64,000 nt of DNA, from the NCBI GenBank assembly GCA_002269645.1, contig NIVC01002162.1, positions 124,001 through 188,000 on the forward strand, given 5' to 3'. Origin of the DNA: Macrostomum lignano. Taxonomy: Eukaryota. Within the stretch, counting starts at the first letter, position 1. Every line of letters begins with the position of its first letter. The notes below the pieces were generated by a model. That model was given only the letters and a program-made list of their open reading frames with translations, was not told the DNA's origin and ran no database searches. The translations under genes were made by a program, and so were the position numbers. Below are positions 27,750 through 63,599 of the stretch, piece after piece.

Positions 27750-30700
27750 TCACTGCCCAGAGGTGAGAGTTACCAGTAGATCTTCAGCATCATCTGGCAG
27801 AGGCGGCAACAGAGGCTGCTGTTGCTGCTGCTGGGTTGGTATTAAATTCGAAGCCAATTCTTCATCATCAACATCTTCGTCGTCTTCCTCATCCAAATCG
27901 TCATCGTCGCCCTCTTCATCTAGTTCGGCATCGTCAATGGCGGTTTCGTTGGCTGTGGCTGCAGCGGCAGAATCAGCAGCGGTGGTGCCAGTCGAAGACG
28001 CGGAGGCGGCGCTGTCAGCGGAGGCGGCCAGGACCGCACGCGGCAGCAGGCGCCTCACGTGCTCTCTGAAAAGCGTCACGTTTAATGCCTTGCGTCAATC
28101 CGCTATAGCTATACTCAGTGCAAAATAGATGAGATTATGCTCAGATTATGCGGATCAGCTTGTGTGAATGTCAACTTAAGCTAAGGACCCGAGTGACTGC
28201 ACAATCGATAACTTTCTGGACCCAGTTGACTAGAAACGACGAGACCCGGTCCCTTTCCTTAGTAAGGCCTTAGTATCTAGTCGTTGCCTTGAAGGAGCTT
28301 CCATTCCATGAGTCCCAAGTTAAACATTGAATCCCTTCTTGAGTACTTTCCTTGGGTTCCTAAAGTATTTTGAACTTCATTCCAACGCTTAAATTGACAT
28401 CCGCTTTTACAGACTCGAAATTTTGCAAGTGACCTGTAAGACGTCTTTGATGACGTGCAATTCTGAGCGTCAGCAAGGGTATCAACTCGAGACTGGATTT
28501 GGCTTACTTTTCGGGATAATTAAATTGTTTCTAGTAATCTTCCTTTTCTGGATTCTTACATGGAACTCTGCAGGGTGGATTTTGACCCTAACATCAAACC
28601 AAATGTCTGGATTCTGACCCTGACATCAAACTTAATGTCTGGATTCTGACCCTGACATCAAACCGAATGTCTGGATTCTGACCCGGATACCAAACTTAAT
28701 GTCTGGATTCTGACCCGGACATCAAACCGAATGTCTGGATTCTGACCCGGACACCAAGCTTAATGTCTGGATTCTGACCCTGACATCAAACCGAATGTCT
28801 GGATTCTGACCCGGACACCAAGCTTAATGTCTGGATTCTGACCCGGACACCAAACTTAATGTCTGGATTCTGACCCTGACATCAAACCGAATGTCTGGAT
28901 TCTGACCCGGATACCAAACTTAATGTCTGGATTCTGACCCGGACATCACACCGAATGTCTGGATTCTGACCCTGACATCAAACCGAATGTCTGGATTCCT
29001 ACCCTGACATTTTATCTGCAAGGTACACGTAAAGACGCATAAAGACAATCCAACGAAGAATAATATATAAATAAATATGCTACACAACGTTATTTAAAGA
29101 CTGATAAGTTTACATCGTATTAACATCGTATTACCTGGTCAGCTGTCGAAATTCCGCCATATCTGACTCCGAGTACCAACCGAAGGTGTCGTGACAAACC
29201 GGTTGAATTGGTGCAGCTGCGACGCGTTCGGCAATGGACGGCACGTGAATGTGGCAGAGCTGCAGGCACAGCTGGCCAACCCGGGGCAGCCGGTCCGGCT
29301 CCAGTGAGAACTCCGAACCGGCCGACACCGAGCGGCCGTGACGACGAATTTGACGTACGCGGACGTCCAGGCACTGGTAGATCGCAGCACCTTAGGACGG
29401 GTGATGAGTTGAGACTTCAAGTTGAATTGAAACTGCTCAAAAGTTGACAGTAGAAATCTGTTCAGATCCTTCACTTACAGCAGGGGTCGGCAAACTTTTT
29501 ACCTCCAGGGCCGCATAGAGAACCCAGCGCATGACTGCAGGCCAGAGGGGGGAGAGGAGAAGGAACAGAAGAAGAGAACTAGGAGAAATCAGAGGTGAGG
29601 GAATAAAGGAAGAGAGTTGAGAGGAGAGGAGAGAGGAGAGGGGAGGAGAAAGAGAAGAGAAGGAGAAGAGAGAGGAGTAAAAAGGAGAGGAGAGGAGAGG
29701 AGAGGAGAGGAGAGGAAAGGAGAGGAGAGGAGAAGAGAAAGGTGAGAGAAGAAACAAACTTTGAGCGGGAGGGATTGTGAAGTTTTAAAGAACCCGAGGG
29801 CCGGATGTGGCCCGCGGGTCTGAGTTGCCGACCCATGACTTACAGGGGGGGGGGGGGCATCACAAACCCGAAAAATCACAACTCCGAAATTAATAGCAAC
29901 ACACATCATAAACCCGAAAAATCACAACTCCGAAATTGATAGCAACGCACATCATAAACCCGAAAAATCATAACTCCGAAATTGATAGCAACGCACATCA
30001 TAAACCCGAAAAATCACAACTCCGAAATTGATAGCAACGCACATCATAAACCCGAAAAATCATAACTCCGAAATTGATAGCAACGCACATCATAAACCCG
30101 AAAAATCACAACTCCGAAATTGATAGCAACGCACATCATAAACCCGAAATATCATAACTCCGAAATTGATAGCAACGCACATCATAAACCCGAAAAATCA
30201 CAACTCCGAAATTGATAGCAACGCACATCATAAACCCGAAAAATCATAACTCCGAAATTGATAGCAACGCACATCATAAACCCGAAATATCATAACTCCG
30301 AAATTGATAGCAACGCACATCATAAACCCGAAATATCATAACTCCGAAATTGATAGCAACGCACATCATAAACCCGAAATATCATAACTCCGAAATTGAT
30401 AGCAACGCACATCATAAACCCGAAATATCATAACTCCGAAATTGATAGCAACGCACATCATAAACCCGAAATATCATAACTCCGAAATTGATAGCAACGC
30501 ACATCATAAACCCGAAATATCATAACTCCGAAATTGATAGCAACGCACATCATAAACCCGAAATATCATAACTCCGAAATTGATAGCAACGCACATCATA
30601 AACCCGAAATATCACAAACCCGAAATATCATAACTCCGAAATTTCTAGCAATGTTCAACACTAGTTTGGTTTTCGGAGTTATGATATTTCGGGTTTGTGA

Positions 30701-33549
30701 TTTTTCGGGTTTATGATGGCGACCCTTTACAGGGTCCTTACTAGCTTTCTCAAATGCTTCAGGGGGTCCTCAATTAATCCTTTCAGATCGTTTCCCATCT
30801 TACTGTTAGAAGCTACTTCTCAAATCCTTTCAATGGTCCCCGCTACCATCAGGTCCTACCTGACCTGACCTCAGGGTCAGGTCCTATAATGGACGCTGTT
30901 TAGTCACCAGATCCCACCCCAAGAAAACAATGAGAAGCCCACCTGACTCAACAATGGGATTATACCCAAAGCGCAGCCACAGATGATGCCAAGGCCCTCT
31001 GTACATGTGATAGGCCTTAGCCTTGATCAGCAGTTTAGCCTGGCTCCTATTAGCAATATCGCGTAGGCAATGAGACACGTAGGCAATCGATATAATGGGA
31101 GTTTCAGCTAACAGCTGGTCTAAACGTTCCAGCACGCGCTGCGATCGAAGGTCTCTCAGCCTGGTCACTTGGGCTTCAATCTCAGGCGTGGGGCCGGTGG
31201 GTGCGCCAGACTTGCGCAGATCCGCCAGAGTGGTCGACACTGTCAGACCGCAGCGACTCTTTCTAGTGAACATGCGCGGTCCAGCGACGTCAGGATCGGC
31301 AACGGAGGCGGCGGCCGCTTGAGGTCCAGAATCCTCGGGATCGAAGCGCATCGGCTCCCAGAGTCGATAGTCGCTTTGCGCGTCCGGCCGCGATAACGGC
31401 ATAGTGACGAGGTGCAGCGGTACATCATCGCGACAGAACCAGTCTTCTACCTGGCGGTTTTTGGGGATAGGGGATTAAATTATTTTTGAGCTGATCGGCT
31501 CCACTACGGAAATCCAAATGTGCCATTTTGAAACACGATTGCGCCATTGTTAAATCCAAATGTGCCATTTTGAAACACGATTGCGCCATTGTTAAATCCA
31601 AATGTGCCATTTTGAAACACGATTGCGCCATTGTTAAATCCAAATGTGCCATTTTGAAACACGATTGCGCCATTGTTAAATCCAAATGTGCCATTTTGAA
31701 ACACGATTGCGCCATTGTTAAATCCAAATGTGCCATTTTAAAATTCAAATGTGCCATTTTTAATCCAAATGTGCTATTTTTCCGTCAGGGTGTGTCACTT
31801 TTATATCCAAATGTGCCATTTTTCTATCAGGTGTGCCCTTGTTAAATCCAAATGTGCCACTTTTCCATCAAGGTGTGCCCTTTTTAAATCCAAATGTGCC
31901 ATTTTTTCATCAGGGTGTGCCATATTTAAATCCAAATGTACCGTTTTGAAACACGATTGCGCCATTGTTAAATCCTAATGTGCCATTTTTATCCAAATGT
32001 ACCATTTTTATCCGAATGTGCTATTTTTCCATCAGAGTGTGCCATTGTTAAATCCACATGTACTATTTTGAAACACAATGTGCCATTTTTAAATCTTAAT
32101 GTGCCATTTTGAAACACGATGTGCCATTTTTAAATCAAAATGTGCTATTTTGAAACACGATTGCGCCATTTTTTAAAATAAATGCGCCATTTTGAAGTCC
32201 AAATGTGCCATTTTGAAACACGTTTGTGCCACTTTTAAATCCAAATGTGCCATTTTTAAACCGAAAGTGAAAACAACAATAAATCTTGTCACATGAGCAC
32301 ACAGCGCACCTGATCAAGCGGTCTCGAAGGTACCAAATCGTCGTACAGGTCGCGATACTGTTCGAGATTTGGCCCGGACCGAATAAATGTCAGATATTGC
32401 AAATCTGCCAGACCATTGAATTCGTAGGTGCAGCCGCTTTGACCAAGGCATTCGATTTGAAAGCGTTCATCGCCTGTGACTTTGTGCCGCTGTCTGCAGG
32501 GAACGGTTTATGCACTCTTTATCAAGGAGGGCTTACAAACCAATTTAAAAGTATAATAATTATGCTGAATATCAGAAGGGCTAAATAGCTCAGCGGTTAA
32601 GCCGTTTGTTTGACTGTTTCGCACGCAGAGTTCCCTGGGTTCTATTAAGCTTTGTGCAAGGATATATTCATGTATTTAGCCTGGCCACCAGTTGTGAGAC
32701 CAATTTCGCTTACTATAGTGTACAACATAGCTAAGAAAACGTTATAACAAAACGACTACATAAAACATGCGTCGGCAACTCGGGCCCGCGGCCCACATCC
32801 GGCCCGCAAAGCCTCTATATCCGCCCCTCGGGTTCTTTAAAACTTCACAATCTCTCCCGCTCAAAGCTTGTGTCTCTTCTTAGCTTTCTTCTCTCACCTT
32901 TCTCTTCTTCTCCTCTCTCTTCTCCTCTCCTCCACTCCTCTTCTCTCCTCTCCCTCTTCTCTTCTCTTTTCTTCGCTCCTCTTCACTCGTCTTCTCTTTA
33001 CTCCTCTCACTTCTCCTATTTCATCTCCCCTTTCCTCTCCTTTCGTCAACTCTCTTCCTTTATTCCCTCACCTCTCATTTTTCCTAGTTCTCTTCTCTGT
33101 CCCTTCTCCTCTGTCCCCTCCCCTATTTTTAGCACAATTTAATAAATCTGTTGCTAAAATATTAAAGCAGAAAAATGCAAAAAACTTTGAAAAATATCGA
33201 GATAAAGCATGCCATGCGCACCATTTAAAAAAGCACTCGAGCTACACATTAAAATATATATATAACCGCACCTGACTACTCTCAGTACAAAAGCAGCTCG
33301 GCTAGTTACGGGATCTGCGACAGCCACTCTAGGCAGAGCATCCTCTGGATTGAATTGCAGCTGCAGTCTCAGCTGGTGCTGCTGCTGCTGCTGAAGCCGC
33401 TGTGGCTGCTGCAATTGAGCAGCAAAAGACTCTGCGAGTTTGTCCAGCCCGCCAAGCATCCGGATCGCTCGATCTTCATTGCGAACTATGCCGGGAAATT
33501 CCACGGCTAATAGTTGCCGATTGGATAGGGGCACCTCCTGCTGCTGCGA
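27750..33549 (-). CDS. GTF3C5: General transcription factor IIIC subunit 5 (Tau95/TFIIIC63), 5 exons, ~513 aa, no in-exon ATG
   Basis: Exons 33549-33272, 32493-32310, 31450-30943, 29390-29135 and 28065-27750 join in frame. Motifs VEFPGIV...MLGG, YEFNGLADLQY, YRGPWHHLWLRFGYNP, AIYQCLDVRVR, and an acidic C-terminus. Confidence 0.9.
28600..29005. repeat. 32-bp minisatellite in GTF3C5 intron 4
   Basis: Unit GTCTGGATTCTGACCC(T/G)GACA(T/C)CAAAC(CG/TT)AAT. Confidence 0.93.
29481..29837. mobile_element. hAT (Charlie-like) MITE, 357 bp
   Basis: Termini CAGGGGTCGGCAAAC ... AGTTGCCGACCCATG; perfect 8-bp TSD ACTTACAG (29473-29480 and 29838-29845); internal GA-rich tract. Confidence 0.9.
29846..30729. 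mobile_element. Foldback element containing a 46-bp tandem array (~17 copies)
   Basis: Unit AAACCCGAAAAATCACAACTCCGAAATTGATAGCAACGCACATCAT; the right end (30670-30729) is the reverse complement of the unit motifs. Confidence 0.8.
31505..32270. repeat. 42-bp minisatellite with degenerate tail in GTF3C5 intron 2
   Basis: Unit AAATCCAAATGTGCCATTTTGAAACACGATTGCGCCATTGTT. Confidence 0.92.
32586..32650 (+). mobile_element. Degenerate tRNA-like head
   Basis: A-box-like TAGCTCAGCGGTTAAG and a decayed B-box GGGTTCTATT. Confidence 0.4.
32766..33125. mobile_element. Second, inverted copy of the hAT MITE family
   Basis: CATGCGTCGGCAACTCGGGCCCGCGGCCCACATCCGGCCC...CTCGGGTTCTTTAAAACTTCACAATC matches the reverse complement of 29740-29837; far end is degraded. 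Confidence 0.8.
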
Positions 33550-33639
33550 CTGCAATTACGCAATATATAAATAAAACTGCTTTGCAAAGTTTACTTTCGA
33601 TACATATCGGATCAATCCAAAATTCACGCTCACATAGGG

Positions 33640-33850
33640 TGTACAGCGGCACTTTGACTTTCCAGTCGTCAGGCATGTACACTCTCAGTGCATTGGGGGT
33701 TGTTTCTCGTGGATGTGCATCGCGCTATAACCCTCTTCGGCCAATTTTCGTGTACTAAAAACCCCAAATGAATGCGGCCGCGCACGGAATCGAACCAGGG
33801 GCCACGGGGCGAGAGTAAAAAATTGCGTCTACTGCTGAGCTGAGCTGAGC
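33640..33850 (-). mobile_element. tRNA-derived SINE (copy 2)
   Basis: TAGCTCAG A-box, GGTTCGATTCC B-box, then the core AACCCCCAATGCACTGAGAGTGTACATGCCTGACGACTGGAAAGTCAAAGTGCCGCTGTACAC. Confidence 0.8.
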
Positions 33851-34654
33851 TACAAACAAAACAAAAAAACGAATACGAAAAATAGCAAAATAAATTAGAA
33901 GTTTTACCCTCTATGCAGGTAAGCCTACCCTTACAACTAGTAGAATATTCTAAGAAACGCCTATTATAGCCCATCGCAAAAACAAAAAATAACAAAACTT
34001 CATTATAACATAATTGTGCTCAACCAAAAAAGAGAGAAAATTAGTTTGCACAAAACTCGAGTAAGAAATACTTGAATAATAAGTTTATTTTTATAATAAA
34101 TTCGTCCAAGTGCTTAAGGAGTCTAAAAGAGATTTGAGTAACACTATTACAATTTATTTTTTTAAAGTTATTAAAGTTAGACAAATCACAGATCAAAAAT
34201 GGTACACAGCGTAAACTTTAAGTAAAATTGTGGACAGAAAGGAAATCTAAATTTTAAGGTAATTATGTAATGTAATTAGAAGCTCCGCTTCGCTGTTTTC
34301 ATTACTCATAATCTTTAGTTGGTATCCGTATAGTTTAAATAACAAATTATTAGACAAAGCTATTAAATAATAACAGAACTCTTTAGATGCTAGTAAAGAA
34401 GATTTACTAGTCAATTATTAACAAGTATTTAGAGTTGTTTGAAAACATTACTGCAATCGTTTCCTTCAAACTTAATTCACTATCTTTTCCATTGCTAAAG
34501 AAGTATAACAAGTTCCTACTTTCAGTTTAGTAGCAGGGAAGCATACGTAAGCTATTTTGTAAAAATAAGGCTGTTAAAACGACTGCGGAGCTTGCAGACT
34601 TGATGTAAACAGTGCATTAGCCCAGCCTGGTACACTGGGGAAGGCAATAAAAAT

Positions 34655-35220
34655 TGGGTGGCGGGGCGGGGGTAGAGATTTTGTCTTGAACGGCGCAGTA
34701 GGGGGTTCAGTTGGGGAGGATGGTAAGAAAAAAACTGGGGTGGCGGGGCGGGGTAGAGATTTTGTCTTGAACGGCGCAGTAGGGGGTTCAGTTGGGGGAG
34801 GATGGTAAGAAAAAAACTGGGGGTGGCGGGGCGGGGTAGAGATTTTGTCTTGAACGGCGCAGTAGGGGGTTCAGTTGGGGGAGGATGGTAAGAAAAAAAC
34901 TGGGGTGGCGGGGCGGGGTAGAGATTTTGTCTTGAACGGCGCAGTAGGGGGTTCAGTTGGGGGAGGATGGTAAGAAAAAAACTGGGGGTGGCGGGGCGGG
35001 GGTAGAGATTTTGTCTTGAACGGCGCAGTAGGGGGTTCAGTTGGGGGAGGATGGTAAGAAAAAAACTGGGGGTGGCGGGGCGGGGTAGAGATTTTGTCTT
35101 GAACGGCGCAGTAGGGGTTCAGTTGGGGGAGGATGGTAAGAAAAAAAACTGGGGGTGGCGGGGAGGGGGTAGAGATTTTGTCTTGAACGGCGCAGTAGGG
35201 TTCAGTAGGGGGAGGGGAGG
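34655..35220. repeat. ~82-bp G-rich minisatellite, ~7 copies
   Basis: Unit GGGGTGGCGGGGCGGGGTAGAGATTTTGTCTTGAACGGCGCAGTAGGGGGTTCAGTTGGGGGAGGATGGTAAGAAAAAAACT. Confidence 0.93.
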
Positions 35221-35566: not shown

Positions 35567-38008
35567 TTAATCCTGGTTGATCTTCTTAAACTCGGCCACC
35601 TGAGCCAGCACGTGAGCTAGTATAGCCTTGGCGTCTCGTTTATCTGCTGGCAGTTTGTTAGTAACGCCCAGAATCTCTCCGCACTGCCTAACATAGTATT
35701 CCAAGTCTTCGTCTGTGCACTTGTTAGTAATCTGAGCTAGGCGAACTTTCTCCGTGCTAAACTGTTCGTCTAGATCGAACAGTTCCAGTGCCGGGGCTGG
35801 CAACTCGCGAAAGCTGGGCGGAAACACGGCCGGTTGTAGAGGCGGTAGCGGTGTCTCAAATTGCGGCTGAATCAGCGACAATTGCTCGTGCTTGACGCGC
35901 AGCTTGTCGTAGGCAGCGATGGCCTTGGGCACCAGGCTGGTGTCCATCACGTATAGAGACGAGTCGTACAGGCTCAACACATCTTTTGGTACATCGTCGC
36001 TCTCTTGTAGGCAGGCCTTGAGCTCTTCGGACAGGGCTTCAATGTCCGGCGCGTGCTGATAGTCGGCCACTTCCGGCTCTTCAGCATCGATGGCGTTCAG
36101 TTGCAAACTATCCGAGGACAGGTACTGAAGTAGCACTTCCAGCAGCTGGGACAGGGGCGGGTTGGATGGAAGTTTAGTGTTCGAGTTTAGGGATTGGAGT
36201 TTAGTGTCCGAGTTTGGGTATTGGAGTTTAGTGTCCGAGTTTGGGTATTGGAGTTTAGTGTCCGAGTTTGGGTATTGGAGTTTAGTGTCCGAGTTTGGGT
36301 ATTGAAGTTTAGTGTCCGAGTTTGGGTATTGAAGTTTAGTGTCCGAGTTTGGGTATTGGAGTTTAGTGTCCGAGTTTAGGTATTGGAGTTTAGTGTCCGA
36401 GTTTGGGTATTGGAGTTTAGTGTCCGAGTTTGGGTATTGAAGTTTAGTGTCCGAGTTTGGGTATTGGATTTTTGTGTCCGAGTTTAGTATGTCCGAATTT
36501 TTGTGTACGAGTACGAGTTTAGTGCCCGAGTCTAGGTGCTGGATTTTTGTGTCCGAATTTGAACTGAGTTTCCAAGGTGTCCAACACCAAGGGTGTTTAA
36601 GTTTGGATGTCCAATGGATGTCAAATTTTAATATAGGAATTTATGCGTTAAAGATGTGTGTCTTAGACGGAGTCTACAAGATGTAGTGTGTCCAAGGTTT
36701 AGATCGAGTGTCCGAGATTGATACTAGTGCCCGAGATTAATATTAGTTTCCAAGATCAATTATTAGTGTCCGAGATTAATATTAGTGTCTGAGATCAATA
36801 TTAGTTTCCGAGATCAATATTAATATCTGAGATCAATATTAGTTTCTGAGATTATTATTAGTGTCTGAGATTAATATTAGTTTCTGAGATTATTATTAGT
36901 GTCCGACACTATTAAATAATAGTGTCCGAGATCAATATTAGTGTCCGAGATTGATATTAGTGTCCAAGATAAATATTTCTGTCCGAAAACAATATTAGTG
37001 ACCGAGATCAATATTAGTGTCCGAGATCAATATTAGTGTCCGAGATCAATATTAGTGTCCGAGATCAATATTAGTGTCCGAGATCAATATTAGTGTCCGA
37101 GATCAATATTAGTGTCCGAGATCAATATTAGTGTCCGAGATCAATACTAGAGTCCGATCACAAACTGTTAATTCACTTACCTTGAAATTGTCCTCCTTGT
37201 CGATATACTCGTCCGAGAAGGCGGCGGCAGCACCGAACACGGCCACTTTGCCGCCCCCGCCGCTGCCAGCAGCGCGGCTACTAGACGCGGGAGCAGCAGA
37301 AGCAGCAGCGGCAGCAGCATTGGCAAAGGCGCAGACAGGCCTATTAAGCGGAAACGCTACGCTCCCAGTGCTGAGAACAGCCACGGCCGGCTTAGCGACA
37401 TTAAGCGTGGCGCCGTACGGATAGACAAAGTGCAGCGAAGACTTGTGCACCGACGATGAGTCACCGCCGCCGCCGATACCGGCAATCATCGGCGGGAGAG
37501 CTTTGCCAGCGGCCTCGCTAATCGCCCTATTCAGCACACCGTTGGGCACGTAGCATTCCTTGGGGTGAAAGTACTTATAGTAGGCTGTGCGAACAACGCA
37601 ATCGCTATTTACTGAGATGCCCAACTCTTCTAGAAAGAAATTCACGTTAGTATCGAATCGCGACTCGCCGCCTTCGCCCATGAGCACCAGGATGCTGCCG
37701 CCCTTGGCCAAGTAGGCCTTCATCGCGTCGAACTCGGACACAGAGAACTTCTCATTAGGCAAAGCGACTAGAAATATTCTAGCCTCGGACAGTCGCGACT
37801 CGGTCACTTCGTCTTTTAGGCTGACAATTTTCCAGCTGGATTTCAATTTCCTAGTCAAAGTTTTGAAACCATAGTTGGGACCGAAAGCATCGTGTTTGGA
37901 GGCGTTAATTAGCAGGACATTGCTGCCAGCGATTCCAGCTGAAGCGTCTGGATGGTCGCGGCCTCCGTTCATCACCGCCGATGGCTCCGTGGGCGCCGGG
38001 GCTGGCAT
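35567..38008 (-). CDS. IFT52: Intraflagellar transport protein 52, 2 exons, ~468 aa
   Basis: Exons 38008-37181 and 36145-35567. Motifs GGSILVLMGEGGESRFDTNVNFFLEE, YYKYFHPKE, PQFETPLPPLQPAVFPPSFRELP, LELFDLDEQFS, NKCTDEDLEYYVR. Confidence 0.96.
36170..37150. repeat. Two adjacent minisatellites (27 bp and 19 bp) filling the IFT52 intron
   Basis: GAGTTTAGTGTCCGAGTTTGGGTATTG (36170-36480) and AGTGTCCGAGATCAATATT (36720-37150). Confidence 0.93.
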
Positions 38009-38074
38009 GGCTGCGACCAAATTGCTGCAACAGTGAATTGAAATTGACTTGTCTTGGACACCTTGGGTTTATAG

Positions 38075-59699: not shown

Positions 59700-62600
59700 T
59701 TAGCTGTTGAAAGTGTCTTTCAGACTGGCAGTTTGCATTGGAATGCAGTCTTGCAGATTTTGTTTGAAGTCGTCAAGACTGCGCACTTCAATGCCCTGCA
59801 AAGGATATATACGAGTATGTACACGAGTACAATTAGGGCAATGGTTGAAATATTGATCAGCACTTACTGCTAGTTTATCCTGTTAAAGCTTTACGCTATT
59901 TTTACTTAGATGACGATACACTCAGATTTTTTAATTTGCCTGAGAGCCTAAAGGTACTGTATACCTGTATTTATTCATAACTACACGCCGAAGGCAACAT
60001 TTCCAGTTTAAAAAAACAGAAAAGCACATGTACACTCGTACAATGCTGCCGGCTCACCTGATAGGTAGCATAATAATCGTCCTGAGCATTAAAGGTGAAC
60101 TGCTGCCTATTGATTTTGTGAACACTCAGCACACGCCTGTCTTGCGAACCCTGTTTCAGCCATTTCTAAAATATATAGTTTACAGTGATTACATGTAATA
60201 CAGGTATGTACTGTGAGGGCTCATTGGCACGATGGGTTACAATGTAAGTGGGAAGTTTTTGATTGGACAAATCAAATAATCAAATCATCATTTATTTGTA
60301 CAAGCACTAGCTGATGAACAACTTTGACAGAAATTGTACATTGGGGCAGTAGTGGAAGGGCTGGGTAAATGTACATTGGGGCAGAAAGGAAAGGAGTCGA
60401 AGGACTGAGCAACAATATGTGCATTGGGGTAAGGAGTGGAAAGTCTTGGAATTAAGCACATGTACATCGGGGCAGGAGTGGAAGGGCTGGGTAAATGTAC
60501 ATTGGGGCAGAAAGGAAAGGAGTCGAAGGACTGAGCAACAATATGTGCATTGGGGTAAGGAGTGGAAAGTCTTGGAATTAAGCACATGTATATTGGGGCA
60601 GGAGTGGTAAGGGGCTGGGCACATCTACATTTGGGTAGAAGTGGAAGGACTGGGACATGTACAATAGCCACACAGTACGAGCTATAACGACGTTATAGTA
60701 TGTATATTGCTGGGAAAATTTGTGCCAATGCGTCAAAGTCTTGAAACTTTAAACGTTCACTTCGGATTATCGAACGCTTACTAGTGGGTAAACAACTAGA
60801 CAGCTCACCTTCCAATAATTGTAAAGATCCTTTTTGCTAATTCTATCCAGAATAGTTTTGACATTGGTGTCCAAACTATGGGTATCCCAGCTGAAATCGT
60901 AGTCGCCGCAGGTGATGTGTCGCCAGTACAGCTCATGCTGCCTGTTTAAATTTGGCGCAGTAAACAGACGTGTCGCAAGCTGTTGCACTCGACTCTTCAT
61001 ACCCGCCAGCTGCTCCTTGGTTATGGAATCCACTGTTTTACCGACGCATGCGATTACCAACTCGATTGTTGTTTCAATCTGCGTGCAGATGTTTAGCAAC
61101 AGGTCAATATTCATGCAGTAAAACAGCTTGCTACATGTCATTCTGAATGTAAATCCGCAAGAAAATACAGTAGCAAAATATTCTGTCAGCCAAGGTCTCA
61201 AGAAACTGGGGCACAGAGTCAAAGGGCGTGTCTCTGAATCGTCCACCGGCAGTTAAAGAAACGCCGACTGAGAATGCCGTGTCCTTGCTGTGAATGCATA
61301 TATCTACTGCATCTAATACCTAGAATAATTGCATGCAGAAGGCAGGTTGTGAGCGCGCAGGCACAACGCTTTCGACGACATGGTTCCACGGCCAATGCTC
61401 CGAGGCAATTCCGAGCGCGCCAATACTGTACGCAGGCACCCATGCACTCATTATACACACGCTCACACAGAGTGCACAGCTTGACCTTCTAATCGTCAGG
61501 CATGTGCACTCTCTGCGCCTTGGAAGTTGGTCCTCATGGCTGTGAATCGCACGACAGCTCTTCTAATGAGAAGTTCAAACCAAGAGACTTACCGCAACGG
61601 GATGCGACTCGGAGACTAGCTCAATGACGATGCAGTTGGCATTGCAGCCAATCACCGTGTCCCACCTTAAATCGCGCTTTGTACAGTCGGGCAGTTTGGT
61701 ACAGAGTGTCAGAGCTTCTTTCAGTAGCCACAAGCAGCAATTATGCCAGAACCGACGGAAGAAGAAGTCGTCGTATTTTGACGCTTGCTTTTTTAACCCT
61801 CCCGATATCGCAGTCGGCATCTGAAGCAGCAGGCCGCAAACCGACTTGGTCAACGCAGCGTCGCCTTTCTTCAACCTCGTAGTCCGGCTGGTAAGTTCGA
61901 TGCTTCTGTTAGTAGCGAAGTTCAACCGGATGAAATGGTGACTGCCTCTTGGTAGGAGTCGCTCAGAACAGCGCATAAAAAATGGATCCAATCGAAACGT
62001 GTCCGCTGGACGCCGCGAAAGTGGTGGAAGAACAGCTGTAATTGAGTCAACCAGTGAGATGACTTGCTCAGCAGTGAGATTGCCCAGCGCCAGAATCTCA
62101 GCATACAGTTCTGGCCGGCTGGGCCAGTTCTCGCGTTCCAGCGGAGTGGCATGAGCGGGATTGGAAAAGTGATGCGCTATGAAACTTGACGGATTGATTT
62201 CCACTTCTCGGTCTGGCTTTTGTGCTATGAGAGGAAAACATTGTGCAATTATGGTTGAGCTACAAGTCAGTGCGACAGTTTACAATCAATGGTACCTCAC
62301 TCACCCAGCGTTTGCGTATCCAAGGACTGATAGTCTCGCTGGATGTGTAAAAATCCAGCCAGATCCAAGCGATTTGCAATCTGGGATAAGTCTGAACAGG
62401 GCTGTAATGAAAACTTCTGCGCTCTAAGATTTCCAATGCGCTCCTGTGCAAAGGTGAACGAAATGTTCAAAATTAATTTGAATGCAATGAATGTAATTTT
62501 AAATTTAAAAAATAACTTTGATGGGCTGCATCTTAAATCCTGAGCCGCTGGACCCTAAGCACATACTGTACGCAGGCACGCAGTCATAACAACCGCTCAC

Positions 62601-63599
62601 ACAATGTTTACAGCGGCCCTGACTTTCTAATTGTCAGGCACGTACAGGGGCGTCGCTACCGGGAGGACAGGGGGGGGGGGAGGACATGCCAATGCCTTGT
62701 CCCCCCCACCCCATCTTCGTTGACCTGTAATGGAAATAAAAAAATCGCTTCAGAGCGACAAAACATAGCGCCTGCGGACAAAAATGGTGCCTGCGGCGCT
62801 AAAATGAGTGCCTGCGGCGCTAAAATGGGTGCCTGCGGTGCTATAATGAGTGCCTGTGAACCAAATTGAGTGCCTGCGGCGCTAAAATGAGTGCCTGCGG
62901 TGCTAAAATGAATGCCTGCGGTGCTAAAATGGTCGCTGACGACACCGATTCTGAAAAAATGTACATATAGTAATTTAGTCGTGTACATGTACATTTACAA
63001 TTCTTGGCTTTGTCCCCCACCATAAAATCCATGGCAACGCCCCTGGGCATATACACTCTCTTTGCCTTGGGGGTTGGCCCTCATGGCACCACACCTCCCG
63101 GTCAATCTTCCGACCTTCTACGGAATCGAACCAGGGGTCGTGTTGCGCGAGATTCAGACGCATTATAACTGAACTTCTCTGCCCACAGTGTTTTAAGGCA
63201 GTCTGCCAAAGGAAGACACACCTGGTTGAAGTAGTTTAAGGGAACTCGCAGCTCTGCAATGCGACCCAATGCGGCCAACAAAAGGGCCGGTAGAGGCTCG
63301 CTGTGACCGCTGCAGCACACCTGGATGCCGTTGCAGCTTCGAGAGACGCTCAGCTCAAGGTCGGCTTCAACCGCTTGCATTTTCAGATCGGCCAGCTCTT
63401 CAGAAAATAGATTGGCCAGAATGCTGATCTGCAGAGACGAGGCCAGGGCGAGCCTCACAACGTCAACTGGAGGCAGCAGGTCAACGGATATGTAGGCAAG
63501 TTCGGTTTGGAACCGGTCATCTTGTCGGAACCAGAGATTAGTGCTGGATGAGCTGCCGTCTAGTGTACTTTGGCGTTTGATTTTTCGAGGCCCGTTAGG
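59700..63599 (-). CDS. Insulinase/nardilysin-like (peptidase M16) gene, C-terminal half; 5' part not resolved in the window
   Basis: Approximate exons 63599-63222 (LWFRQDDRF, M16 middle domain), 62423-62305, 62224-~61590, ~61260-60820 (ELYWRHITCGDYDF...ISKKDLYNYW), ~60160-60060 and ~59795-59700 (SLDDFKQNL). One junction could not be put in phase. Confidence 0.7.
60330..60650. repeat. ~122-bp tandem duplication in an intron
   Basis: GGAAGGGCTGGGTAAATGTACATTGGGGCAGAAAGGAAAGGAGTCG...GGAATTAAGCACATGTA occurs twice. Confidence 0.85.
61405..61545 (-). mobile_element. SINE core and tail fragment (copy 4)
   Basis: Minus strand GCCATGAGGACCAACTTCCAAGGCGCAGAGAGTGCACATGCCTGACGATTAGAAGGTCAAG...GTGCCTGCGTACAGTAT. 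Confidence 0.75.
62560..63175 (-). mobile_element. tRNA-derived SINE (copy 5) interrupted by a MITE
   Basis: B-box GGTTCGATTCC near 63125; core AACCCCCAAGGCAAAGAGAGTGTATATGCC resumes after the insertion as TACGTGCCTGACAATTAGAAAGTCAGGGCCGCTGTAAAC. Confidence 0.8.
62645..63045. mobile_element. hAT-type MITE, 401 bp
   Basis: Termini CAGGGGCGTCGC...GCAACGCCCCTG; degenerate 8-bp TSD GGCACGTA/GGCATATA; internal ~22-23-bp GTGCCTGCGG(C/T)GCTAAAATG repeats. Confidence 0.8.

What the first reader, a model, noticed from the sequence alone, without database searches (positions are those of the whole stretch)
33470..33560. GTF3C5 lacks its own start codon; a spliced-leader AUG would be exactly in frame
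Seen: the first exon begins after TATATTGCGTAATTGCAG with TCG CAG CAG CAG GAG GTG, and there is no Met before the conserved VEFPG motif. The ORF-track start is a TTG inside the acceptor. Established: flatworm spliced leaders end in a conserved AUG that can initiate translation. Inference: the initiator Met of this essential Pol III factor is donated in trans, giving ~514 aa, about the usual size of this subunit.
Basis: partly seen in the sequence, partly recalled or inferred. Interest (0 to 1): 0.7.

Follow-up and report, generated by a model that had tools for sequence, protein, structure and literature searches.

The report
Spliced-leader-donated start codon for GTF3C5
In the flatworm Macrostomum lignano, the gene for RNA polymerase III factor TFIIIC subunit 5 has no start codon of its own ahead of its conserved N-terminus and most likely takes the AUG at the end of the trans-spliced leader; this mechanism is already known in flatworms, so it is a tidy new example rather than a new phenomenon.

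Summary
The window is Macrostomum lignano and is identical to GenBank scaffold NIVC01002162.1. On the minus strand lies a five-exon GTF3C5/tau95 gene of 513 genomic codons.

- **Exon 1:** it starts at 33549 (TCG CAG CAG CAG GAG GTG), directly after TTGCAG. That hexamer matches the published M. lignano trans-splice acceptor motif [T/C]TNCAG.
- **No upstream start:** an in-frame TAA lies three codons upstream of the exon.
- **First genomic ATG:** it is at 33459-33457, after the VEFPG motif, and sits inside a block conserved from human to flatworms.
- **Spliced leader (SL):** the published 35-nt leader has a single ATG, its last three bases. Joined at 33549 it is in frame and gives MSQQQEVPLSNRQLLAVEFPG..., 514 aa.

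I found no credible cis-spliced ATG exon between this gene and the upstream IFT52 gene. GenBank marks the CDS as partial in all three homeologous copies, starting within 3 nt of this acceptor. UniProt models start at the internal Met and lose a confidently predicted beta-strand and helix.

No RNA read carrying SL joined to this exon could be reached with these tools, so trans-splicing at this site remains inferred. SL-AUG initiation is established in Schistosoma and Echinococcus and has been noted for Macrostomum.

The parts
33550..33555 (-). TTGCAG trans-splice acceptor, with the AG at 33551-33550. A T-rich tract (TTTTATTTATATATTG) lies just upstream.
   Evidence: Sequence. It matches the published M. 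lignano SL acceptor motif [T/C]TNCAG (PMC8629364). It is identical in three homeologous loci.
33556..33558 (-). In-frame TAA stop three codons upstream of exon 1. It closes the frame in the genome.
33272..33549 (-). Exon 1 of GTF3C5/tau95. It starts TCG CAG CAG CAG GAG GTG and has no ATG before codon 31. The donor is CAG|gtgcgg.
   Evidence: Splice model reproduces GenBank protein P0002 exactly.
33490..33504 (-). VEFPG motif, the conserved VE[YF]PG start of the Tau95_N domain. It is residues 17-21 when counted from the SL Met.
33457..33459 (-). First genomic in-frame ATG (residue 32 from the SL Met). UniProt/WormBase-type models start here.
   Evidence: It lies inside the conserved block and at the end of predicted helix 1.
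32310..32493 (-). Exon 2
30943..31450 (-). Exon 3
29135..29390 (-). Exon 4
27750..28065 (-). Exon 5, with stop TGA at 27752-27750 and an acidic C-terminal tail.
33550..33945 (-). Presumed outron and promoter-proximal block. It is nearly invariant among the three homeologous loci.
   Evidence: 0.5 differences per 100 nt, against 2.4-10 per 100 nt in introns and in the intergenic DNA beyond 33945 (L002 vs L003).
33629..33633 (-). GTGAG donor-like motif 84 nt upstream of the acceptor. It is part of the dispersed repeat and cannot supply an in-frame AUG.
   Evidence: Frame 0 upstream of it is closed by TGA at 33687-33685, with no ATG after that stop.
35567..36136 (-). Last exon of the upstream same-strand gene IFT52. 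It marks the upstream limit of the 2017-nt intergenic region that was searched.

Best explanation
The pre-mRNA of the M. lignano GTF3C5 (TFIIIC subunit 5, tau95) gene is SL trans-spliced at the TTGCAG acceptor at 33555-33550. It is not known whether that pre-mRNA comes from the gene's own promoter-proximal region or from read-through from IFT52.

The 35-nt leader ends in AUG. Joined to exon 1 at 33549 it gives ...UUGCAUG|UCG CAG CAG.... The leader's only AUG then becomes the first AUG of the mRNA and is in frame, so a scanning ribosome would start there and make a 514-aa protein, MSQQQEVPLSNRQLLAVEFPG....

Without trans-splicing the mRNA has no way to encode the conserved N-terminus.

- Shown here: the gene model, the missing genomic start, the frame, the acceptor motif and the conservation of the N-terminus.
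- Inferred: that the SL is really joined at this site, and that ribosomes start on its AUG.
For: - **Organism and gene:** the best hit is 97% identical to M. lignano PAA79067.1, with Tau95_N and Tau95 Pfam domains. The hit to human GTF3C5 (8clk_E) has E=1e-22.
- **Gene model:** five exons reproduce PAA60348.1 exactly, plus one Ser codon.
- **Leader:** the SL sequence comes from PMC8629364. It has one ATG, at nt 33-35, which is in frame with exon 1. Four further AG acceptors (exon starts 33543, 33540, 33537, 33534) also keep the frame.
- **Acceptor:** TTGCAG equals the published trans-splice acceptor motif.
- **Closed frame:** an in-frame TAA lies 9 nt upstream of the exon.
- **Conservation:** the alignment to human GTF3C5 starts at residue 11. 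In 21 orthologs VE[YF]PG starts at residue 11-36, median 18; here it would start at 17.
- **Structure:** AlphaFold places a beta-strand (QLLAVE) and a helix, with block-mean pLDDT 84-91, ahead of the first genomic Met.
- **Annotation:** GenBank CDSs of all three homeologs are 'partial' and start 3 nt into this exon. That annotation cut transcripts at SL-read peaks.
- **No cis exon:** there are 13 phase-0 ATG..GT candidates against 27+-10 in shuffles. None has a GT[AG]AG donor. The longest is frameshifted in L002.
- **Precedent:** PMC9851317, PMC12582326, PMC3510090 and PMC10468722.
Against: - No SL-bearing read, cDNA or peptide for this gene could be retrieved.
- The frame match alone has a 1-in-3 chance.
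- The deposited CDS begins at the CAG after TCG, not at TCG. The annotated 5' end is therefore 1-3 nt off the predicted junction. The neighbouring IFT52 models show similar 5' jitter.
- A canonical GTGAG donor motif lies 84 nt upstream and could compete in cis.
- Two short exons starting at ATG 33676, with weak donors AAA|GTCAAA and AAA|GTGCCG, are conserved in all three loci. Sequence alone cannot exclude them.
Confidence: 0.85

Rival explanations
1. A cis-spliced upstream exon carrying an ATG joins the acceptor at 33550 and supplies the start codon. The SL plays no part.
For: Thirteen phase-0 ATG..GT combinations exist between 33553 and 35566. Four start at ATG 33676 and are identical in all three homeologs; two of these (donors GTCAAA, GTGCCG) leave usable introns of 109 and 103 nt. 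The ~395 nt upstream of the acceptor are as conserved as exons.
Against: - Thirteen candidates is below the shuffle expectation of 27+-10.
- None has the M. lignano donor motif GT[AG]AG.
For 33633, a TGA at 33687-33685 blocks frame 0.
- The 63-codon candidate from ATG 33974 is frameshifted in L002.
- The RNA-seq-guided GenBank models do not extend upstream and are flagged partial in all three copies.
Confidence: 0.07
2. Translation starts at the first genomic ATG (33459-33457), giving a 483-aa protein that begins MLGGLDK..., as in the UniProt models.
For: UniProt entries A0A1I8JA11, A0A1I8HKK0 and A0A1I8HEW3 begin there. It is the first AUG encoded in the genome in this frame.
Against: - This start would delete about 21 residues that align with human GTF3C5 and 21 other orthologs, including VE[YF]PG.
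- It would also delete a confidently predicted first beta-strand and helix.
- The reading frame stays open and conserved for 30 codons upstream, right up to the acceptor.
- On a trans-spliced mRNA the in-frame SL AUG comes first.
Confidence: 0.04
3. A non-AUG codon initiates translation. Candidates are the TTG inside the acceptor on un-trans-spliced RNA, or GTG at codon 6 of the exon.
For: TTG at 33555-33553 is in frame and follows the TAA. Near-cognate initiation exists in eukaryotes (general knowledge, and discussed in PMC9851317).
Against: - The TTG is part of the splice acceptor and is removed by any splicing at this site.
- Unspliced RNA carries three upstream ATGs (33720, 33693, 33676) that open short or out-of-frame ORFs.
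- No evidence calls for this mechanism when a leader ending in AUG is available.
Confidence: 0.03

Closest known systems
Schistosoma mansoni / S. japonicum mRNAs that use the SL 3'-terminal AUG as initiator (Cheng, Cohen, Ndegwa & Davis 2006, J Biol Chem 281:733; read here only through PMC9851317 and PMC12582326)
   Same: The leader ends in AUG. The AUG is in frame with the main ORF. The conserved N-terminus has no genomic AUG, so the leader's AUG is required.
   Different: The species is a free-living macrostomorph rather than a neodermatan parasite, and the gene differs. In Schistosoma, use of the SL AUG was shown experimentally; here it is inferred from sequence and annotation.
Echinococcus granulosus SL-bearing cDNAs needing the SL AUG (PMC3510090)
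   Same: The argument is the same: the N-terminus matches orthologs only if the SL AUG is the start.
   Different: Those cases rest on cDNA clones carrying the SL. No SL-bearing cDNA or read was available for this gene.
Macrostomum SL trans-splicing as annotated (PMC5730564, PMC8629364, PMC10468722)
   Same: The SL is the same. The acceptor motif is [T/C]TNCAG. Trans-spliced genes are enriched for conserved genes. [quoted passage not shown]
   Different: None of these papers names this gene or counts how many M. lignano genes depend on the SL AUG. GenBank leaves the CDS 'partial'.
slORFs in nematodes, Oikopleura and trypanosomes (PMC9851317)
   Same: [quoted passage not shown]
   Different: Those mostly use near-cognate NUG codons or create alternative ORFs. 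Here a true AUG starts the main, conserved ORF.

Membership tests
GTF3C5 / TFIIIC tau95 (Sfc1) family | Tau95_N (PF17682) and Tau95 (PF09734) domains | tested here: met
   Precomputed Pfam hits on P0001 and on the called genes.
GTF3C5 / TFIIIC tau95 (Sfc1) family | Sequence similarity to experimentally solved GTF3C5 / Sfc1 | tested here: met
   Human GTF3C5 8clk_E at E=1.1e-22 over residues 11-346, and S. pombe Sfc1 4bji_A at E=4.6e-9. 136 library hits at E<=1e-10.
GTF3C5 / TFIIIC tau95 (Sfc1) family | Function as a TFIIIC subunit (A-box side, dimer with the tau55/GTF3C6-like partner) | not testable with these tools
   Inferred from homology only.
SL trans-spliced gene of M. lignano | [quoted passage not shown] | tested here: met
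   TTGCAG at 33555-33550.
SL trans-spliced gene of M. lignano | RNA reads or cDNA carrying the SL joined at this site | not testable with these tools
   No read data were reachable. Searches for SL-initiated proteins and supplementary gene tables were empty. Indirect support: the GenBank 5'-partial CDS begins within 3 nt of the AG in three loci, from an annotation that cut transcripts at SL-read peaks.
SL trans-spliced gene of M. lignano | No competing cis donor upstream in the outron | tested here: inconclusive
   A GTGAG motif lies 84 nt upstream at 33633. Whether it is transcribed or used is unknown.
SL-AUG-dependent ORF (criteria used by Cheng 2006 and by PMC3510090) | SL terminal AUG in frame with the main ORF, with no intervening stop | tested here: met
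SL-AUG-dependent ORF (criteria used by Cheng 2006 and by PMC3510090) | No genomic AUG upstream of the phylogenetically conserved N-terminus | tested here: met
   In-frame TAA at 33558-33556. The first ATG is at codon 31, inside the conserved block.
SL-AUG-dependent ORF (criteria used by Cheng 2006 and by PMC3510090) | Demonstrated initiation at the SL AUG | not testable with these tools
   Needs ribosome profiling, a reporter assay or N-terminal proteomics.

The most novel reading that the evidence does not exclude
Production of this essential Pol III factor is strictly gated by trans-splicing, because no other route gives a functional start. In addition, the unusually conserved ~395-nt block just upstream holds a tRNA-derived repeat with a perfect B-box (GGTTCGATTCC, 33796-33786). 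That B-box could act as an extra-TFIIIC site through which TFIIIC feeds back on its own subunit gene, as the ETC6 site does at yeast TFC6 (recalled from memory, not tested).
Probability: 0.07. Interest if true: 0.6.

Novelty: new member of a known kind. Interest (0 to 1): 0.25.

Why it matters
The main value is for annotation. Standard gene finders either truncate this protein by 31 residues (UniProt models start at MLGG...) or leave it 'partial' (GenBank). Knowing that the Met comes from the leader gives the correct 514-aa protein. It also points to a class of M. lignano genes whose start codons are not in the genome next to the gene.

Biologically, translation of a core Pol III transcription factor would depend fully on SL trans-splicing. 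This fits the reported enrichment of trans-splicing among conserved and stem-cell genes in this regeneration model. It does not change what is known about the mechanism.

Tried and rejected
**Looking for direct transcript evidence**
- A word-index protein search with the 47-aa SL-initiated N-terminus found no candidate.
- Exact look-up of the three MS-initiated full-length proteins found them absent from the collection.
- Searches of supplementary tables of PMC5816591, PMC5730564 and the eLife 2016 paper for the gene ids or GTF3C5 returned nothing. Paper full text likewise held neither M. lignano gene id; the only hits were unrelated GTF3C5 papers.

**Testing for a polycistronic unit**
- An IFT52 search, meant to recover the GenBank locus names of the neighbour, did not return the M. 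lignano entry.
- The '.gN' suffixes cannot be read simply as 'Nth gene of one unit', because prefixes are shared by 95%-identity clusters. I dropped that argument.

**Other checks that led nowhere**
- The primary paper, Cheng 2006, is not held and is cited through later papers.
- ARAGORN and Rfam found no tRNA, SL RNA or other RNA family in the window or near the site. No SL RNA gene is in the window.
- I first read the B-box upstream as a possible unique tRNA relic. A second, diverged copy in an intron-like stretch at about 63 kb shows it is a dispersed repeat.
- A Logan RNA contig for a related IFT52 (SRR7235720) carries adapter sequence, not SL, at its 5' end and was not pursued.

Full report
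**What is in the window**

The finding lies on the minus strand. A protein search with the concatenated ORF pieces found a single cluster at 97% identity. It is Macrostomum lignano PAA79067.1 (BOX15_Mlig014743g3, 'partial'), with Tau95_N and Tau95 Pfam domains. The cluster holds three GenBank proteins from three scaffolds of assembly GCA_002269645.1 and three UniProt entries. The window's upstream 6 kb is 100% identical to locus L003, scaffold NIVC01002162.1, gene Mlig001340g5.

**Gene model**

I searched GT/AG junctions for the combination that reproduces GenBank protein P0002. This gave one exact solution:

| Exon | Coordinates (minus strand) |
|---|---|
| 1 | 33549-33272 |
| 2 | 32493-32310 |
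| 3 | 31450-30943 |
| 4 | 29390-29135 |
| 5 | 28065-27750 (stop TGA at 27752-27750) |

- The model has 513 codons, which are one Ser codon plus the 512 residues of P0002.
- The introns are 778-1552 nt and are full of tandem repeats.
- The protein matches human GTF3C5 (8clk_E, E=1.1e-22) and S. pombe Sfc1. It has 136 library relatives at E<=1e-10.

**Checking the observation**

- Exon 1 begins TCG CAG CAG CAG GAG GTG, right after ...TATATTGCGTAATTGCAG.
- The mechanical ORF start is the TTG at 33555-33553, inside that TTGCAG.
- An in-frame TAA at 33558-33556 closes the frame upstream.
- VEFPG is at 33504-33490.
- The first in-frame genomic ATG is at 33459-33457, the 31st codon of the exon.

**Why the missing start codon matters**

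- The HMMER alignment to human GTF3C5 begins at residue 11, counting a donated Met as residue 1.
- In an alignment with 21 orthologs, the block RQLLAVEFPGIVRNEDRAIRMLGG is conserved throughout. The first genomic Met sits inside it, at a position where other species have S, T or M.
- In the orthologs the VE[YF]PG motif starts at residue 11-36, with a median of 18. With a donated Met it would start here at residue 17.
- An AlphaFold model built on a 29-sequence alignment places a beta-strand (QLLAVE) and a helix ahead of that Met. Block-mean pLDDT there is 84-91.
- The UniProt models start at MLGGLDK and therefore lack this part of the domain.

**The spliced leader**

PMC8629364 gives the M. lignano SL as CGGTCTCTTACTGCGAAGACTCAATTTATTGCATG. 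It also reports [T/C]TNCAG as the top motif at trans-splice acceptors and GT[G/A]AG at cis donors.

- The acceptor here is TTGCAG, which fits that motif.
- The SL has exactly one ATG, its last three bases.
- Joined at 33549, it is the first AUG of the mRNA and reads MSQQQEVPLSNRQLLAVEFPG... in frame.
- The next four AGs in the exon (TCGCAG CAG CAG GAG) are all in the same phase. Slippage of the acceptor would therefore still keep the SL AUG in frame.
- The frame match on its own has a 1-in-3 chance. The argument rests on combining it with the closed upstream frame and the conserved N-terminus.

I enumerated every ATG in the 2017-nt interval between the IFT52 stop (35567) and the acceptor that runs without a stop codon to a GT in phase 0.

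- There are 13 such pairs, against 27+-10 in shuffled sequence. None has a GT[AG]AG donor.
- Only two GT[AG]AG motifs exist on this strand, at 33934 and 33633.
- The one at 33633 lies 84 nt upstream of the acceptor. In the GTF3C5 frame the putative exon ahead of it contains TGA at 33687-33685 and no ATG afterwards. The ATG at 33676 is out of phase.
- The longest candidate runs from ATG 33974 to donor GTGCGC at 33785 and would encode 63 codons. It is frameshifted by a 1-nt insertion in homeolog L002.
- Four candidates are identical in all three loci, all from ATG 33676. Two would leave introns of only 28 and 10 nt, too short to splice. The other two are an 18-nt and a 24-nt exon with weak donors AAA|GTCAAA and AAA|GTGCCG. 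Sequence alone cannot exclude these, but nothing supports them.

**Indirect transcript evidence**

The GenBank annotation came from an RNA-seq-guided pipeline. That pipeline cut transcriptional units at peaks of SL-containing reads and then called ORFs with TransDecoder (PMC5730564).

- In all three homeologs the CDS is flagged partial and starts at the CAG that follows TCG, which is 3 nt into the exon.
- A 5'-partial call means the ORF ran to the 5' end of the transcript model. Given the TAA nine bases upstream of the exon, the model's 5' end must lie within a few bases of this acceptor.
- The 1-3 nt offset is unexplained. The IFT52 models next door show similar jitter. I therefore treat this as supportive, not decisive.

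**What could not be obtained**

No read, cDNA or peptide showing the SL on this mRNA was reachable. Trans-splicing at this site and initiation at the SL AUG therefore remain inferences, though strong ones.

**Source of the pre-mRNA**

- FSH1-like, IFT52, GTF3C5 and an amino-acid transporter gene lie on the same strand.
- The IFT52-GTF3C5 gap is 2017 nt, of which 560 nt is an 83-bp tandem array. After subtracting repeats, the gap is still above the 1-kb operon threshold used in PMC8629364.
- The ~395 nt just upstream of the acceptor (33550-33945) differ between homeologs L002 and L003 at only 0.5 sites per 100. Exons show 0.35-1.4 and introns or more distant intergenic DNA show 2.4-10. This would fit a promoter and outron of the gene's own.
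- I cannot decide between a promoter of its own and read-through from IFT52. The main conclusion does not depend on it.

**Comparison with what is known**

- The 3'-terminal AUG is a conserved feature of flatworm leaders and can start translation (Cheng et al. 2006, as summarised in PMC9851317 and PMC12582326).
- As PMC9851317 summarises Cheng et al. (2006), in S. mansoni the AUG is in frame in 28% of trans-spliced transcripts, and more than 40 cDNAs need it.
- Echinococcus cDNAs show the same pattern, and use of the SL AUG is conserved between orthologs (PMC3510090).
- I found no paper naming this gene or counting SL-AUG-dependent genes in M. lignano.

This case is therefore a new member of a known kind.

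**Verdict**

Novelty and interest are low to moderate. The practical consequence is a corrected 514-aa protein in place of a 'partial' or truncated model.

Noticed in passing
window 33627-33853 (minus strand); second diverged copy about 63150-63046 and 62650-62597 (minus strand): This is a tRNA-derived, SINE-like dispersed repeat. It has an A-box-like GTAGCTCAGC with a (TCAGC)n expansion and a perfect B-box GGTTCGATTCC (33796-33786 and 63132-63122). A T5 run lies 21 nt after the B-box, just past the tRNA-like 3' end. The element has no 5' acceptor arm. ARAGORN and Rfam do not call it. One copy lies 80-300 nt upstream of the acceptor of a TFIIIC subunit gene; the other lies in an intron-like stretch between ORFs that appear to belong to one gene.
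   Followed up: partly
window 33550-33945: The ~395 nt upstream of the acceptor are as conserved between homeologs as coding exons (2 differences, against about 12 expected at the rate of the intergenic DNA upstream of the block). This holds even though much of the block is the repeat described above. It could be a promoter and outron under constraint, or a local gene-conversion tract. The cause is unresolved.
   Followed up: partly
window 37990-38030 (minus strand); L001 1774, L002 1722, L003 1548: The upstream gene IFT52 is also deposited as 5'-partial, with different start points in different homeologs (GCC ATG CCA... or CCG GCG...). Candidate acceptors are TTGCAG|CAATTT and TCGCAG|CCATG. 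There the SL AUG would be out of frame with the genomic ATG at 38008-38006, giving a short overlapping upstream ORF.
   Followed up: partly
window 33534-33549: Five consecutive AG dinucleotides lie at the acceptor and exon start (gcAG TCGCAG CAG CAG GAG). All are in one phase, so alternative acceptor choice changes only the number of N-terminal residues and never the frame with the SL AUG.
   Followed up: yes
window 33546-33549; L001-L003 position 6001: The GenBank CDS omits the first exon codon (TCG, Ser) and starts at CAG. The annotated 5' boundary is therefore 1-3 nt off the AG. UniProt models of the same gene start 31 residues further in, at MLGG.
   Followed up: partly
window 28576-29010, 29858-30626, 31510-32260, 34656-35215; also 29619-29738 and 32887-33014: The introns and the intergenic spacer are packed with tandem arrays:
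- 32 bp x 13.6 copies
- 46 bp x 16.7 copies, 97% matches
- 21/42 bp x 36/16.5 copies
- 83 bp x 6.8 copies
- (GAGAG)n / (TCTCC)n tracts

Array copy number is where the three homeologs differ most.
   Followed up: no
window 61575-63458 (minus strand): ORFs of a gene whose translated sequence recalls an M16 (insulinase/nardilysin-like) peptidase, a reading by eye that I did not test, flank the second repeat copy. A 21-bp-type tandem array (about 62770-62950) is inserted into that copy.
   Followed up: no
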